Sequence record: NC_048792.1
Length of the DNA stretch: 64,000 bases
Reading direction: 5' to 3' (one strand)
Part shown: piece by piece, positions 25,454 to 58,304 of the stretch
Position numbering within the stretch: the stretch's first letter is position 1
How the letters are laid out: each line of letters opens with the position of its first letter
Notes under the pieces: model-generated
What the model saw: the letters and a program-made list of their open reading frames with translations, nothing else
What the model was told of the DNA's origin: nothing
Database searches by the model: none
Position numbers and translations under genes: made by a program

Positions 25454-25644
25454 CGTTTACCTCATGGGTAAAGGGTTAGGTAATTTTTTACATACGATCC
25501 ATTAGATATGTAAAAGTAACTATTCCGATTGGAATTGTTGCTAGGTACGTATAATCTATTATATGTACAAACTATTCTTGGGTGCCTCGGGGTGCTCAGG
25601 TCGTACTATAGGCTATATAGCCGAAATGAAACTTTTTTCACGTC

Positions 25645-55888: not shown

Positions 55889-56047
55889 ATGCCTAGTACC
55901 AGTAAGAAACAAGAGCAATTCATGGCTGCCGCTGCCCACGACAAAGAGTTCGCTGAAGAAGCAGGCATTCCCCAGAAGGTTGCTAAAGAATTCCATAACG
56001 CCGATAAGCGTAAGAAGAACAAGAAAGCGATCTTGGCAAAACGTTGA
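55889..56047 (+). CDS. 52-aa basic protein missing from the ORF track (MPSTSKKQEQFMAAAAHDKEFAEEAGIPQKVAKEFHNADKRKKNKKAILAKR)
   Basis: AAGAGGA RBS and good codon bias. Resembles a small phage protein family of the MPSxSxxQxxFMAAxAH type. Confidence 0.7.
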   Translation: MPSTSKKQEQFMAAAAHDKEFAEEAGIPQKVAKEFHNADKRKKNKKAILAKR

Positions 56048-56055
56048 TTTAGATC

Positions 56056-56082
56056 TTTTTTTACGCAACAAGTTTAAGTATG
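56056..56082 (+). promoter_or_regulatory. TTTTTTTAC-N~14-TATG promoter (middle/late type) for the RNA island
   Basis: tttttttacgcaacaagtttaagTATGtag. The same architecture occurs at 25486, 33136 and 48957. Confidence 0.55.
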
Positions 56083-56350
56083 TAGAAGCTGCATCAAGTA
56101 ATCATTTAGTTCAATTAACTCCAGGGTCGATTGTCGGTAACTAAGTGAGATTCAGCTACAAGCGGGGATGGATCCCCACTAACTATTGGAGAGCTTTAAG
56201 GGTACGATCTCAATCGTCCGGGTTGTGGAACAACTTCCGCACACTAGTGCGTTGGTTTAGGGTTCGAATGCCTTAAAGGTAGCGCATGATAGATGCGAGC
56301 AACTAACACGAGGCGACATTACGCGCCTACTCCAATCAAGACGAATTCCT

Positions 56351-56435
56351 GGTAGGTTACTCAAGCGGCAACGAGAACAGACTGTAAATCTGTCGCCTTC
56401 GGGCTTCGATGGTTCGAGTCCATCACCTACCACCA
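56351..56435 (+). tRNA. trnY: tRNA-Tyr (GTA)
   Basis: Acceptor GGTAGGT/ACCTACC, anticodon arm ACAGA-CTGTAAA-TCTGT, long variable arm, GTTCGAGTC T-loop, and encoded CCA. Confidence 0.95.
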
Positions 56436-56443
56436 AATCAATG

Positions 56444-56521
56444 AACCGAGTAGCTCAACTGAATAGAGCACCGTCCCGCTAAGACGGCCGTTGGAGGTTC
56501 AAATCCTTCCTCAGGTTCCCA
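56444..56521 (+). tRNA. Atypical tRNA, anticodon GCT (nominally Ser) on a short-variable-arm body
   Basis: D arm GCTC/GAGC, anticodon arm CCGTC-CCGCTAA-GACGG, T arm GGAGG-TTCAAAT-CCTTC, and CCA. It has C33 and a bulged A in the acceptor stem. Confidence 0.7.
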
Positions 56522-56822
56522 AACAAAGCCCGAAGACGTTCGGGTAAAGTCGTCCCATTTAATTCCCTACTACTTAAGTTACGGTAGATACAGTTAATTG
56601 GGGTGCGATAACAATGACACTTGTCCCCCAAAGCCCTGGGTACTGCACCCAGAAAAAGAGGACTGGCAGCCAATACATAGCGACCAATGGTTAGCTAGAG
56701 CAGCCTTTATAACTCCGTGAAATTCGGAGGAGTGTCTCCCATGATGTCCTCATTGTAGAGGGAGGTTGATTGTAGTCAACCTGTTGTGAAACGAATCTGC
56801 AGTGAGGACTTCTTAACGTTTT

Positions 56823-56910
56823 ATCGAGATAGTCTACTTAAACCTAGTGAGGAATTCGACGGCGGATACGTCCGTAAGACTACGTAGGTTCGATCCCTAC
56901 TCTCGATCTA
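56823..56910 (+). ncRNA. tRNA-like RNA 1 (acceptor and T arm, no anticodon arm)
   Basis: ATCGAGA/TCTCGAT, GTAGG-TTCGATC-CCTAC, and central stem TAGTCT/AGACTA. Confidence 0.6.
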
Positions 56911-57217
56911 GTTAATAGACATCCTAAGAGATCGGTGAAATGACTGCTACTAATCATAGCGGTCTGCCCCCGTTACTACCTGAGAACGGAAGATGTCTGG
57001 GGTACGATATTACACACTACGTTAATCAACCGGGGTGCAACAGGTCAGGGCTTAAACGCATACCTGAGATCCACTTACCATCTATCGGGTGTTGTGGTGT
57101 GTAATCCATTTAGCTAACATGAAGATCGCTATCTACTATTTAAGGTTTTTGATAGCCAAACCATGAGGAAGTTAAACTGATCGGTAAACAACTTCTGTTT
57201 GTCGGTTAAAAGAACAA

Positions 57218-57345
57218 TGACGCCTGCACGTAAAAAGCAGCCTGCGCCAGCTGGGCGCGGTGGGGGCTAAGTGCCAGCAACTGTTGTGGCGAGATCGCGG
57301 CAACAGCACCGGAAAGCCAGGTGCGATTCCTGGGGGCGTCACCCA
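57218..57345 (+). ncRNA. 128-nt expanded tRNA-like RNA ending in CCA
   Basis: TGACGCCT/GGGCGTCA followed by C-CCA, T arm CCAGG-TGCGATT-CCTGG, and three or four internal hairpins. Confidence 0.6.
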
Positions 57346-57347
57346 AT

Positions 57348-57424
57348 TAGGTACGTAAGTCTCAAGTGGCCGCATTCATCTGCCCGCTGCCTAAAGACTT
57401 TGTGGAATGGATTCCGCGTACCTA
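57348..57424 (+). ncRNA. tRNA-like RNA 2, same topology as 56823..56910
   Basis: TAGGTAC/GTACCTA, central stem AAGTCT/AGACTT, and T-like arm GTGGAA-TGGA-TTCCGC. Confidence 0.5.
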
Positions 57425-57460
57425 AAAACCAGTAAGTTAAACTAATAGGACGATTCTACG

Positions 57461-57970
57461 ATGACTATCCTTAATCGCGATATGATCATGCAAGAACTCT
57501 TAAACTCAATAGATCCTGATGCAGGCCCATGTCTTGGGCTTAGCAGGGAAAAAGAGTTAGCCGAAATTTATACGCTAGGATTCAAGGCACCTCGCCAAAC
57601 GGGGTCTACGTATTGGCTTATCGAAAAACTCATTGAGGATCGTAACTCAATTGTAATTTTGATTAATAGCGACTTTAAAGAACACTTCCTAGCGGATGTT
57701 GAGAAATACCCTAAAGTCATTTTCGACAAGTGTCTTAAATATGGACCATCTGTTGAACGGGGTATTCTTAATGGCGACAAAGACAATATAGTCGATCGTT
57801 GCTTCACTGCCAGGGAATTCTTAAACGCTGACCTAGAACGTCACCGCTACGCCACATCGGTCTTCTTTGATGGCGCGTCGACGATTGCTAGTAAGATTAA
57901 TCTTAATGCGTATTACCGAAAGTTGGCCAAAGAAGTAAAAGGTTATCCGGTTACTTGGCTGATTAACTAA
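57461..57970 (+). CDS. Degenerate P-loop protein with a terminase-like Walker A
   Basis: KAPRQTGSTYWL and VFFDGAS. Confidence 0.6.
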   Translation: MTILNRDMIMQELLNSIDPDAGPCLGLSREKELAEIYTLGFKAPRQTGSTYWLIEKLIEDRNSIVILINSDFKEHFLADVEKYPKVIFDKCLKYGPSVERGILNGDKDNIVDRCFTAREFLNADLERHRYATSVFFDGASTIASKINLNAYYRKLAKEVKGYPVTWLIN

Positions 57971-58062
57971 AGAACACTTGATGTGCTGGTAAAGGTTTAG
58001 TCACCTTTTTTAAGATCGTCCGCTAACGATTGATACTAGCGCATCTTTTTTATTGAAGAATC

Positions 58063-58280
58063 CCGCCGATCGGGTAGTGTACGTCTGGCGTAGCCATTAC
58101 TCTAATTGAGTGGGGCTACGAGGGGTTTACCAGTCGATCGGTGGTACCAAACTCTGAGCAGGTTGCAGCCGGCTGGAGTAAATAGGGGACTGCGAGTCCC
58201 CAGGTGCATAAAGGCCCAGAAATGGCGCCCGGCACAAGACGCAGCGCGTCGGTATCGAGAGGGGCTTCGGCCCCTCTCTT
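58063..58280 (+). ncRNA. Candidate ~200-nt GC-rich structured RNA followed by a terminator
   Basis: CCGCCGATCG/CGATCGGTGG, CGTAGCC/GGCTACG, GGGGACT/AGTCCCC, GACGC/GCGTC, then agaggggc-ttcg-gcccctct. Confidence 0.55.
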
Positions 58281-58304
58281 TATTTTCTTCAACGGGAAAC
58301 TGTT

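What the first reader, a model, noticed from the sequence alone, without database searches (positions are those of the whole stretch)
56056..57430. 1.4-kb ORF-free RNA island: two tRNAs among about ten closed RNA modules
Seen: after a TTAC/TATG promoter the sequence divides into consecutive self-closing units separated by short A-rich linkers. These are AGCTG/CAGCT with TCATTTAGTT/AACTAAGTGA (56087-56157); ATTGGAG/CTCCAAT (56185-56337) enclosing CTTTAAGG/CCTTAAAG with three inner hairpins; tRNA-Tyr; the odd tRNA; a 14-bp GTCCTCATTGTAGA/TCTGCAGTGAGGAC (56746-56809); tRNA-like 1; AGACATC/GATGTCT (~56917-56998); ATTACACACTAC/GTGGTGTGTAAT (~57009-57104); the 128-nt CCA RNA; and tRNA-like 2. Known: phage tRNA clusters are polycistronic and cut by RNase P/E, and T4 encodes extra stable RNAs of unknown function in its cluster. 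Inference: this is a polycistron of novel small RNAs, possibly decoys for anticodon nucleases or other RNA-sensing defences, which the DNA-protecting nucleus cannot block.
Basis: partly seen in the sequence, partly recalled or inferred. Interest (0 to 1): 0.8.

Follow-up and report, generated by a model that had tools for sequence, protein, structure and literature searches.

The report
Phage island of tRNA-like RNAs
A 1.4-kb protein-free stretch of a Serratia jumbo phage holds two tRNA genes and about a dozen folded RNA modules; at least four belong to unnamed RNA families shared with the tRNA clusters of unrelated phages, and their function is unknown.

Summary
The window is Serratia phage Moabite.

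Pairing alone is not above chance. Coding DNA from the same window gives as many "closed" local folds. The real evidence is comparative:
- **M2 (56184-56337)** belongs to a four-way-junction RNA family with 93 distinct copies in phages, metagenomes and three bacterial genomes. Of its cells, 97.9% are paired, and 16 of 23 pairs show compensatory changes. Most copies (64 of 93) lie within 500 nt of a same-strand tRNA gene. It matches no Rfam family.
- **tRNA-like 1 (56823-56908)** is a covarying family also found in T4-like Klebsiella phages and in other jumbo phages.
- **M8 and a newly delimited module M4** have homologues in other jumbo-phage genera.
- **M1, M5b, M7, the CCA RNA and tRNA-like 2** remain confined to the genus and are unvalidated.

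The island is a mosaic, tRNA-type array of stable RNAs, of the same kind as T4 rnaC and rnaD. The decoy idea is untested, and the anatomy gives it little support. I rate it a new variant of a known kind, interest 0.65.

The parts
56056..56084 (+). Candidate phage promoter motif, T-run-AC, 14 nt, then TATGTA
   Evidence: Present as described. The same motif type is found only at 25484-25515 elsewhere in the window. There is no sigma-70-like promoter or + strand terminator inside the island. Its function is inferred only.
56087..56157 (+). M1: closed module with a 5-bp outer stem and a 10-bp inner stem
   Evidence: Stems verified; module-aligned z is -3.2. Found only in Moabitevirus. In Totoro it carries 10 substitutions, including one A-U to G-C compensatory change and one mismatch. 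Weak support.
56162..56179 (+). Short GC hairpin between M1 and M2
   Evidence: Fold. 100% identical in all relatives, including Totoro. No run of U follows it, so it is not an intrinsic terminator.
56184..56337 (+). M2: member of a widespread four-way-junction RNA family. It has P1 (7 bp), P2 (8 bp) with a variable tRNA-like insert at its tip, P3, an invariant 14-nt junction and an invariant P4.
   Evidence: Scores 122 bits against model R1, and it is the only copy in the window. Family covariation is shown. The Moabite and Yaphecito copies have a 12-nt deletion that removes half of a T-arm in the insert.
56351..56435 (+). tRNA-Tyr (GUA), class II, with CCA encoded
   Evidence: ARAGORN, and Rfam at 52.9 bits.
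56443..56521 (+). Odd class-I tRNA with a GCU anticodon, a bulged 8-bp acceptor, and C33
   Evidence: ARAGORN tRNA-Ser(gct); Rfam at 41.4 bits with two acceptor mismatches. Relatives have U33.
56528..56609 (+). Two stem-loops (56528-56544 and 56549-56609) in the strain-variable segment
   Evidence: Fold. This segment is replaced by unrelated sequence in the other Moabitevirus genomes. Unvalidated.
56616..56736 (+). M4: large module closed by GACAC/GUGUC, ending in a hairpin with a UGRRAUU loop
   Evidence: Shared framework with Erwinia phages Kwan and pEa_SNUABM_29 and with the 2050HW-type island. Blastn also hits Asesino, phiEaH2, Stratton and pSal-SNUABM-04. One compensatory pair in the 3' hairpin and one inner stem swap (GUCC/GGAC to GCAC/GUGC). 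Moderate support.
56746..56809 (+). M5b: 14-bp hairpin enclosing an 8-bp hairpin
   Evidence: Stem verified; z is -4.0 for 56700-56812. Relatives change U-G to C-G and U-A to U-G, which keeps pairing on the + strand only. Confined to the genus.
56823..56908 (+). TL1: tRNA-like RNA with a 7-bp acceptor, a 6-bp second stem, a UACG-capped hairpin, an invariant internal loop and a canonical T-arm
   Evidence: Scores 110.5 bits against model R2; ordinary tRNAs score 28 bits or less. In 8 distinct sequences, 98% of cells are paired and 11 of 25 pairs are compensatory. Homologues are in N1M2, SXP01, JD18 and about 59 T4-like Klebsiella phages.
56917..56998 (+). M7: cloverleaf-like module with a 7-bp closing stem, an 8-bp arm with a 7-nt loop and a 5-bp arm next to the 3' strand
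   Evidence: Fold (z -2.8). Part of a 297-nt insert found only in Moabite and Yaphecito. No homologue found. It could be a decayed tRNA.
57009..57105 (+). M8: long-stem RNA with a conserved interior
   Evidence: Homologues in Klebsiella phage N1M2 (next to tRNA-Asn) and Erwinia phage AH04 (after tRNA-Cys). 31 consensus pairs, 3 of them compensatory.
57109..57208 (+). M8b: two hairpins, the second with a 13-bp stem at 57178-57208
   Evidence: Folds. One weak match in Shewanella phage SXP01 (78% over 63 nt). Unvalidated.
57218..57345 (+). CCA RNA: 128-nt tRNA-like RNA with a 7-8-bp acceptor, a 5-bp T-stem with loop UGCGAUU, two expanded arms and an encoded CCA end
   Evidence: Coordinates checked. 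The acceptor/T-arm fold is within 1.6 kcal/mol of the MFE. Found only in Moabitevirus. Its middle arm is replaced, with a 1-nt indel, in 2050HW-type genomes.
57347..57425 (+). TL2: three-way junction with a 9-10-bp closing stem, a 6-bp arm and a T-arm-position hairpin
   Evidence: Fold (z -3.1); stem confirmed. Found only in Moabitevirus. Motif hits in IMG/VR are chance matches.

Best explanation
The island is a tRNA-type gene array that produces non-coding RNAs. It encodes two decoding-type tRNAs and about a dozen other structured RNAs, laid out head to tail like tRNA genes.

At least four modules (M2, TL1, M8, M4) are portable RNA genes. They circulate among the tRNA clusters of large lytic phages and are kept by selection on RNA structure.

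**Inferred biogenesis.** The array is transcribed rightward from a phage promoter near 56056-56084, or by read-through. The host tRNA-maturation enzymes then cut it up, because most modules present a 7-bp terminal stem stacked on a 5-bp hairpin, which is an acceptor/T-arm mimic. RNase P would make the 5' cut, 3' trimming would follow, and CCA would be added where it is not encoded.

**Inferred function.** The products are stable tRNA mimics, like T4 rnaC and rnaD. They would engage tRNA-binding host or phage factors through invariant single-stranded cores: the 14-nt junction plus P4 in M2, and the internal loop in TL1.

The array is a recombination hot spot. Cassettes are gained, lost and swapped independently of the flanking genes.
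For: **Shown: the stretch is non-coding and holds only two canonical tRNAs**
- No conserved ORF.
- Only two canonical tRNAs, and no other Rfam family.

**Shown: the M2 family**
- RNAalifold recovers P1-P4 from 15 sequences, with 13 compensatory pairs.
- There are 101 cmsearch matches, 93 of them distinct. Of cells, 97.9% are paired against 71.6% in shuffles. 16 of 23 pairs carry double changes.
- The covariation score is 0.566, against 0.115 for shuffles and 0.03-0.08 for slid controls.
- 64 of 93 copies lie within 500 nt of a same-strand tRNA, many only 1-15 nt away.
- In Erwinia phage Ea21-4 a strong sigma-70-like promoter ends about 10 nt before P1, and a second one follows the element.

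**Shown: other families**
- TL1 scores 60-110 bits in ten loci from three phage lineages, with 11 of 25 pairs compensatory.
- M8 has three members with compensatory pairs.
- M4 shares its framework across genera.

**Shown: cassette behaviour**
- N1M2 carries M8 and TL1 in the opposite order.
- The 297-nt block holding M7, M8 and M8b is present only in Moabite and Yaphecito.
- In Totoro the flanking genes are 70-77% identical while the RNA modules are 87-100% identical. In close relatives the flanks are 98-100% identical while the odd tRNA is 90%, M5a is 76%, and the CCA RNA is 88% in 2050HW only (98.5% in Haymo and Kodama).

**Precedent**
- T4 carries rnaC (with a T-arm) and rnaD (ending in CCA) at the end of its tRNA cluster, annotated as small stable RNAs.
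Against: - There are no expression or end-mapping data for any module.
- Thermodynamic structure in the island is no greater than in coding DNA.
- M1, M5b, M7, M8b, the CCA RNA and TL2 have no homologue outside the genus, and little or no covariation, so they may be inert.
- The high identity of the modules in Totoro could reflect recent recombination rather than selection. Even its non-conserved spacer matches the 2050HW type.
- The invariance of the M2 junction and P4 is partly built in by the search pattern used.
- The M2 P4 loop is not a T-loop, and one or two unpaired nt separate P4 from P1, so recognition by RNase P is a guess.
- No binding partner is indicated: no protein family recurs next to M2.
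Confidence: 0.6

Rival explanations
1. The non-tRNA modules are decoys that soak up anticodon nucleases or other RNA-sensing defences such as PrrC, PARIS, retron effectors or Cas13.
For: - Phage tRNAs do rescue infection from tRNA-cleaving defences: tRNA-Tyr against retron-Eco7 PtuAB and tRNA-Lys against PrrC (PMC11555353); tRNA-Lys against PARIS (PMC11464382); and anticodon-loop variants (PMC10264068).
- The one canonical tRNA kept by this genus is tRNA-Tyr.
- Several modules keep the acceptor/T-arm shape of a tRNA.
Against: - Known anticodon nucleases read the anticodon stem-loop. TL1, TL2, the CCA RNA and M2 have no 7-nt loop with U33 resembling tRNA-Lys, tRNA-Tyr or other targets.
- The M4 hairpin loop (UGRRAUU) has G at position 33.
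- M2 is conserved in phages of Enterobacterales, Alphaproteobacteria and Acidobacteria hosts, which suggests a universal partner rather than a patchy defence system.
- Nothing has been tested.
Confidence: 0.12
2. The island is a decaying tRNA cluster. Most modules are tRNA pseudogenes and recombination scars with no function of their own.
For: - The syntenic clusters in related genera hold 8-10 canonical tRNAs (ChrisDB, Kwan), against two here.
- Several modules keep T-arm or acceptor remnants. M7 has a cloverleaf layout.
- The M2 insert in Moabite has lost half a T-arm to a 12-nt deletion.
- A homing-type HNH gene has destroyed tRNA-Tyr in Totoro.
- Segments are replaced or absent between near-identical genomes.
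- The island is no more stable than coding DNA.
Against: - M2, TL1, M8 and M4 coexist with intact tRNAs in other phages. They keep non-tRNA structures through compensatory changes and have invariant non-tRNA cores.
- Relaxed ARAGORN runs recover no credible tRNA from them.
- The TL1 model scores real tRNAs at 28 bits or less, against 60-110 bits for family members.
- This explanation remains open for M1, M5b, M7, M8b, TL2 and the CCA RNA.
Confidence: 0.18
3. The modules act in cis on expression of the array. They would be processing punctuation, protection against exonucleases, or anti-termination elements that keep RNA polymerase going through a long untranslated transcript.
For: - 53 of 93 M2 copies have a same-strand tRNA within 300 nt downstream, and M2 often opens the array: Ea21-4, Wc4, Moabite, and the Bosea, Limoniibacter and Acidobacteriaceae loci.
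- Untranslated arrays are exposed to Rho (established knowledge).
- No trans partner is evident.
Against: - M2 is a closed domain with its own promoter in Ea21-4, followed by a second promoter that serves the tRNAs.
- About a quarter of copies have no tRNA in the fetched locus.
- The phages that carry it use host RNA polymerase (Ounavirinae) or, probably, their own (jumbo phages). A polymerase-binding element would not be expected to stay invariant across both.
- TL1 and M8 sit in the middle of arrays.
Confidence: 0.08
4. The island encodes small proteins, as annotated in GenBank (CDS 075, 078, 079, 080).
For: Four small CDS with putative ribosome-binding sites are annotated. ORF 075 stays open in close relatives.
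Against: - ORFs 078 and 080 acquire stops or frameshifts in near-identical genomes, and ORF 079 is absent from them.
- ORF 075 overlies M2, whose substitutions across 93 sequences preserve base pairs, not codons.
Confidence: 0.02

Closest known systems
Phage T4 stable RNAs species 1 and 2 (rnaC, rnaD)
   Same: They are non-tRNA genes of 119-139 nt at the end of a phage tRNA cluster, on the same strand as the tRNAs. rnaC has a canonical T-arm beside a terminal stem, and rnaD ends in CCA. This matches the Moabite CCA RNA, TL1 and TL2 in size, placement and acceptor/T-arm theme. Their function is also unknown.
   Different: No sequence or model-level similarity was found. Blastn of all modules, and models R1 and R2, find nothing in the T4 cluster apart from ordinary tRNAs. 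The Moabite island carries many more such genes than T4.
YrlA / bacterial Y RNA (Rfam RF02553)
   Same: A long terminal stem carries a tRNA-like domain. In some M2-family members (for example L016) the insert has the same permuted order as YrlA: T-arm, capped acceptor hairpin, then D-arm (PMC4201824).
   Different: Rfam scores are 22-29 bits against a gathering score of 69. No Ro60/Rsr gene, or any other recurrent gene, lies nearby. The conserved core sequence is unrelated. The tRNA-like insert is optional, ranging from 15 to 211 nt.
Canonical and intron-bearing phage tRNAs
   Same: M2 has cloverleaf topology: a 7-bp terminal stem, a 2-nt linker, three further arms, and a 5-bp arm next to the 3' strand. 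TL1 has a true T-loop. Spacing to neighbouring genes is that of tRNA genes.
   Different: There is no D-arm/T-loop elbow and no 7-nt anticodon loop. ARAGORN and RF00005 reject them even at relaxed settings.
GOLLD and ROOL large RNAs of phages
   Same: They are structured non-coding RNAs of phages that often lie beside tRNA genes, and their function is unknown (own knowledge; papers listed).
   Different: They are several times larger than these modules (own knowledge). No Rfam match was found even at E up to 10.
HDV-like 'theta' and other self-cleaving ribozymes next to phage tRNAs
   Same: They are small conserved RNAs placed directly beside tRNAs in phage genomes. The invariant junction nucleotides of M2 are what a ribozyme core would look like.
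   Different: No match to any Rfam ribozyme family. M2 is a plain four-way junction without the nested pseudoknot of HDV-like ribozymes. Cleavage has not been tested.

Membership tests
Canonical tRNA (RF00005 / ARAGORN) | Cloverleaf with a D-arm, a 7-nt anticodon loop and a T-loop, scoring above the family threshold | tested here: not met
   Only 56351-56435 and 56443-56521 pass. Relaxed ARAGORN runs give only inconsistent calls on both strands.
T4 rnaC/rnaD-type stable RNAs | Non-tRNA gene inside a phage tRNA cluster, on the same strand, 80-140 nt long, with tRNA-like terminal features | tested here: met
   Placement and anatomy of TL1, the CCA RNA and TL2, compared with the T4 annotation and folds.
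T4 rnaC/rnaD-type stable RNAs | Sequence or structure homology to rnaC or rnaD | tested here: not met
   No blastn or covariance-model hit in the T4 cluster, L011.
T4 rnaC/rnaD-type stable RNAs | Accumulates as a discrete stable RNA processed from the tRNA precursor | not testable with these tools
   No transcriptome for Moabite or its relatives was found.
YrlA / Y RNA | Match to RF02553 at the gathering score | tested here: not met
   22.6-29 bits against 69. The window hit spans two adjacent tRNAs.
YrlA / Y RNA | Encoded next to a Ro60 (TROVE) gene | tested here: not met
   Among 1034 neighbouring ORFs, no family recurs in more than 4 loci. The ORFs were not scanned for TROVE domains themselves.
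tmRNA | tRNA-like domain plus a tag reading frame, detectable by ARAGORN or Rfam | tested here: not met
   None at default settings. Only implausible permuted calls appear at a 70% threshold.
Self-cleaving ribozymes, GOLLD, ROOL and other curated RNAs | Match to any of 4227 Rfam models | tested here: not met
   Nothing but tRNA in the island at E up to 10, and nothing in 8 related loci.
M2 family (defined here, model R1) | Four-way junction with covarying P1-P3, an invariant J3/4 and P4, and placement in a tRNA array | tested here: met
   Window copy scores 122 bits, E 2e-25.
TL1 family (defined here, model R2) | Acceptor, second stem, UACG hairpin, invariant loop and T-arm | tested here: met
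   Window copy scores 110.5 bits.
Anticodon-nuclease decoy (functional class) | Anticodon stem-loop that mimics a targeted tRNA | tested here: not met
   No such loop in the non-tRNA modules (folds). Only the two real tRNAs have anticodon arms.
Anticodon-nuclease decoy (functional class) | Protects infection from a tRNA-targeting defence | not testable with these tools
   Requires plating assays.

The most novel reading that the evidence does not exclude
M2 would be the first recognised member of an undescribed, ancient class of phage RNA. It is a roughly 100-nt four-way-junction core with an invariant junction, often carrying a tRNA or tRNA-like domain on one arm. It is embedded in tRNA arrays of phages infecting hosts from Enterobacterales to Acidobacteria.

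It would act on the tRNA system itself. It could be a ribozyme, or a scaffold that presents a tRNA-shaped handle to a universal tRNA-binding machine. TL1, M8 and M4 would be further classes of the same hidden layer of 'tRNA-array RNAs'.
Probability: 0.3. Interest if true: 0.85.

Novelty: new variant of a known kind. Interest (0 to 1): 0.65.

Why it matters
Phage tRNA clusters are usually annotated as tRNAs plus empty gaps or spurious small ORFs. This island shows that the gaps can hold conserved RNA genes. One family (M2) has about 90 distinct copies, textbook-quality covariation, an invariant core, no Rfam entry and no literature hit for its core sequence. A second (TL1) is present in dozens of sequenced T4-like Klebsiella phages.

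The function of T4 species 1 and 2 RNAs is still unknown (own knowledge). These families give that question new, tractable handles. They occur in easily handled phages (Felix O1-like Salmonella phages, Erwinia phage Ea21-4, Klebsiella phage JD18), and natural variants exist, such as the 12-nt deletion and cassette presence or absence between near-identical genomes.

If the RNAs manipulate tRNA processing, tRNA-binding proteins or tRNA-directed immunity, they would add an RNA-level layer to phage takeover of translation.

Tried and rejected
**Detector searches that found nothing**
- Relaxed ARAGORN (60-90% thresholds, introns, mitochondrial models, permuted tmRNA) gave only inconsistent calls.
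- Rfam at E up to 10, on the island and on eight related loci, found only tRNAs and sub-threshold noise: YrlA, mascRNA and miRNA models.

**Tests of structure by energy or stem counts**
- These do not separate the island from coding DNA, so module-aligned z-scores were not used as evidence.

**Searches for homologues of individual modules**
- The CCA RNA and TL2 have no relatives outside Moabitevirus by blastn. Exact T-arm motifs in IMG/VR gave only chance or unrelated hits.
- The flanking 169-aa protein finds only 2050HW in IMG/VR. In GenBank phages (14 records) it finds mainly Moabitevirus, plus four distant jumbo phages at 25-33% identity that were not examined, so it did not yield a wider set of syntenic islands.

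**Searches for clues to M2**
- No protein gene recurs next to M2.
- No match in 5,426 complete E. coli genomes.
- No relevant paper contains its core sequence; the only hit is an unrelated weevil microsatellite paper. The supplement of the viral structured-RNA catalogue is not held.

**Readings considered and dropped**
- M2 as an HDV-like ribozyme, a hairpin ribozyme or a SAM-I-like aptamer. The topology is wrong or there is no model match.
- TL1 as a homologue of T4 rnaD. They share only a short AGGAAUU stretch, and there is no model hit.

**A technical failure**
- The first MAFFT alignment of TL1 was out of register for the JD18 group and gave a misleading consensus. It was replaced by a model-based alignment.
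Full report
**What the sequence is.** The window is the first 64 kb of Serratia phage Moabite (MK994515.1), with identical coordinates. Moabite is a 274-kb jumbo myovirus of the genus Moabitevirus. The finding lies between a 52-aa CDS (55889-56047) and a 169-aa CDS (57461-57970), both on the + strand.

**Checking the observation.**
- ARAGORN and Rfam find only tRNA-Tyr (56351-56435) and an odd class-I tRNA with a GCU anticodon (56443-56521). No other Rfam 15 family matches at E up to 10, apart from noise. Relaxed ARAGORN settings add nothing credible.
- The longest ORF in the 1.41 kb is 67 aa.
- GenBank annotates four small CDS here. Two are disrupted and one is missing in genomes that are 98-100% identical in the flanks. 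The fourth overlies an RNA whose helices covary.
- The stretch is therefore non-coding and holds two tRNAs, as described.

**Is the folding more than chance?** On its own, no.
- Module-aligned folds give z-scores of -1.8 to -4.0, and +0.5 for tRNA-like 1. Those boundaries were chosen to close stems.
- Unbiased 120-nt windows give a mean z of -0.6 in the island and -0.68 in 236 coding windows.
- Local folding finds 10 closed units covering 68% of the island, against a mean of 10.0 units and 67% in 43 control segments.
- Stems of 12 bp or more are only about twice as frequent as in the window overall.
- The case therefore rests on comparative evidence.

**Close relatives.**
- Six Moabitevirus genomes align across the island. 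56040-56340 is almost invariant, except for a 12-nt deletion in Moabite and Yaphecito that removes half of a T-arm-like hairpin.
- tRNA-Tyr exists as two alleles. 56522-56700 is replaced by unrelated sequence in the other genomes. 56909-57205 (M7, M8, M8b) is an insert found only in Moabite and Yaphecito.
- The middle arm of the CCA RNA is swapped, with a 1-nt indel, in 2050HW-type genomes.
- In near-identical genomes the flanks are 98-100% identical. The odd tRNA is only 90% identical and the 3' end of M4 (M5a) only 76%. The CCA RNA drops to 88% in 2050HW but is 98.5% in Haymo and Kodama.
- In the divergent phage Totoro the flanking genes are 70-77% identical (43% at the amino-acid level for the downstream protein), while the RNA modules are 87-100% identical.
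- The history of the island is thus decoupled from that of its flanks. This fits cassette exchange, selection, or both. The non-conserved spacer in Totoro also matches the 2050HW type, so recombination is certainly involved.
- Totoro also has an HNH nuclease gene in place of most of tRNA-Tyr.

**M2 (56184-56337): distribution.**
- Its 3' half matches 51 GenBank phage records from unrelated groups: Ounavirinae of Erwinia, Salmonella and Pectobacterium; Machinavirus; Seoulvirus; CBB; and KEY. The match always lies in a gap of a tRNA cluster.
- A 19-base core pattern finds 11 IMG/VR loci and 81 metagenome loci, several on contigs of 100-355 kb.
- In 185,579 bacterial and archaeal genomes it finds only three genuine sites (Bosea, Limoniibacter, an Acidobacteriaceae MAG), each just upstream of tRNA-Pro.

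**M2: structure and covariation.**
- RNAalifold on 15 sequences gives a four-way junction. It consists of P1 (7 bp), two unpaired nt, P2 (8 bp), four nt, P3 (often capped by GNRA), a 14-nt junction, P4 (5 bp, invariant), one nt, then the 3' strand of P1.
- A covariance model (R1) scores the Moabite copy at 122 bits and finds no second copy in the window. It collects 101 matches, 93 of them distinct.
- On that alignment 97.9% of cells are paired, against 71.6% in shuffles. 16 of 23 pairs carry changes on both sides, in 490 cells. The covariation score is 0.566, against 0.115 for shuffles and 0.03-0.08 for slid controls.
- Two caveats apply. The alignment is fitted to the model, and the invariance of P4 and the adjacent junction is partly imposed by the search pattern.

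**M2: variable insert and context.**
- The tip of P2 carries an insert of 15-211 nt (median 89). About half of the inserts have a T-loop-like motif. Some are a permuted tRNA body (L016) or a complete tRNA that Rfam calls (L019). The shortest members lack the insert altogether.
- 64 of 93 copies lie within 500 nt of a same-strand tRNA, often 1-15 nt away.
- No protein family recurs nearby.
- In Ea21-4 a strong sigma-70-like promoter ends about 10 nt before P1, and another follows the element, so there M2 is its own transcription unit.
- There is no match in E. coli genomes, and no relevant paper contains the core sequence.
- In layout M2 resembles a heavily remodelled cloverleaf: a 7-bp terminal stem, a 2-nt linker, and a 5-bp arm next to the 3' strand.

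**tRNA-like 1 (56823-56908).**
- Blastn finds it in 89 records: N1M2, the Shewanella jumbo phage SXP01, Citrobacter CF1 and about 59 T4-like Klebsiella phages.
- In JD18 it lies between tRNA-Leu and tRNA-Thr.
- Individual folds agree on a three-way junction: acceptor stem, second stem, a UACG-capped hairpin, an invariant internal loop and a canonical T-arm.
- A model built from four sequences (R2) scores ten loci at 60-110 bits. Ordinary tRNAs reach at most 28 bits, and T4 rnaC and rnaD are not hit.
- In eight distinct sequences, 98% of cells pair and 11 of 25 pairs are compensatory.

**M8, M4 and the rest.**
- M8 (57009-57105) has homologues next to tRNAs in N1M2 and Erwinia phage AH04, with three compensatory pairs. 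In N1M2 the order is M8, another T-arm module, then TL1, which is the reverse of the order in Moabite.
It is closed by GACAC/GUGUC and ends in a hairpin with a UGRRAUU loop. It shares this framework with Kwan, pEa_SNUABM_29 and 2050HW-type genomes, and shows blastn similarity in Asesino, phiEaH2, Stratton and pSal-SNUABM-04.
- M1, M5b, M7, M8b, the CCA RNA and TL2 were found only in Moabitevirus. Support for them is limited to a few wobble or compensatory changes.
- The CCA RNA can adopt a 7-8-bp acceptor plus 5-bp T-arm ending exactly in CCA, at 1.6 kcal/mol above the MFE.

**What it most likely is.**
- It is a tRNA-type array of stable non-coding RNA genes, of the same kind as T4 rnaC and rnaD, but richer and mosaic.
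- Shown: several modules are conserved, covarying RNA genes that travel among phage tRNA clusters.
- Inferred: co-transcription from the motif at 56056-56084, which recurs only at 25484-25515, with no internal sigma-70 promoter or + strand terminator.
- Inferred: maturation by RNase P, 3' trimming and CCA addition, by virtue of the acceptor/T-arm-like ends.
- Inferred: action as tRNA mimics through their invariant cores.

**Rival explanations.**
However, the non-tRNA modules lack anticodon-loop mimicry, and the breadth of M2 suggests a universal partner.
- The retained tRNA-Tyr is the better candidate for counter-defence.
- Decay of a larger tRNA cluster remains plausible for the genus-limited modules, since ChrisDB and Kwan have 8-10 tRNAs at the syntenic site.

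**Novelty.** Extra stable RNAs in phage tRNA clusters are long known (own knowledge). The specific families are absent from Rfam 15, and I found no description of them. I therefore rate this a new variant of a known kind. M2 is the part most likely to prove a genuinely new RNA class.

Noticed in passing
L003 (Serratia phage Totoro) 1947-2552: An HNH nuclease ORF occupies the place of the 3' two-thirds of tRNA-Tyr. Only about 27 nt of the 5' part of the tRNA remain. This looks like homing-endonuclease activity in the tRNA cluster.
   Followed up: partly
L007 (Serratia phage Kodama) about 1955-2049: An extra 95-nt tRNA-like gene lies between tRNA-Tyr and the odd tRNA. ARAGORN calls it only when introns are allowed (Arg tcg with a 17-nt insert in the anticodon loop).
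   Followed up: partly
L006 (Serratia phage Haymo) 1862-1941: The tRNA-Tyr allele lacks 8 nt of the anticodon loop and is annotated as tRNA-Asn.
   Followed up: no
window 56443-56521: The odd tRNA has a class-I shape with a GCU anticodon and no long variable arm. It has an 8-bp acceptor with a bulged A and a D-loop without the GG pair. Position 33 is C in Moabite but U in Haymo, Kodama and Totoro. Its best match outside the genus is JD18 tRNA-Arg(UCU), so it may be an Arg-type body reading Ser codons, or a non-decoding mimic.
   Followed up: partly
window 57971-58304: A second ORF-poor gap of 334 nt lies after the 169-aa gene. It has two tiny overlapping annotated CDS and a strong terminator at 58257-58278. 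It is 83% identical in Totoro, against about 70% for the neighbouring genes.
   Followed up: no
window 25484-25515: The same T-run-AC ... TATGTA motif as upstream of the island occurs here on both strands, as if it were a divergent promoter pair.
   Followed up: no
L019 8866-9083 and 9282-9460; also L059, L068, L071, L080, L107: Some contigs carry two M2-family copies in tandem. One copy in L019 has the compensatory P1 core GUG/CAC, lacks P3, and holds an Rfam-callable tRNA at the P2 tip.
   Followed up: partly
L024 (Klebsiella phage N1M2) 2086-2200: Between its M8 and TL1 copies, N1M2 has a further module with a terminal stem and a T-arm-like hairpin (loop UUAGAGU) that no tool calls as a tRNA.
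   Followed up: no
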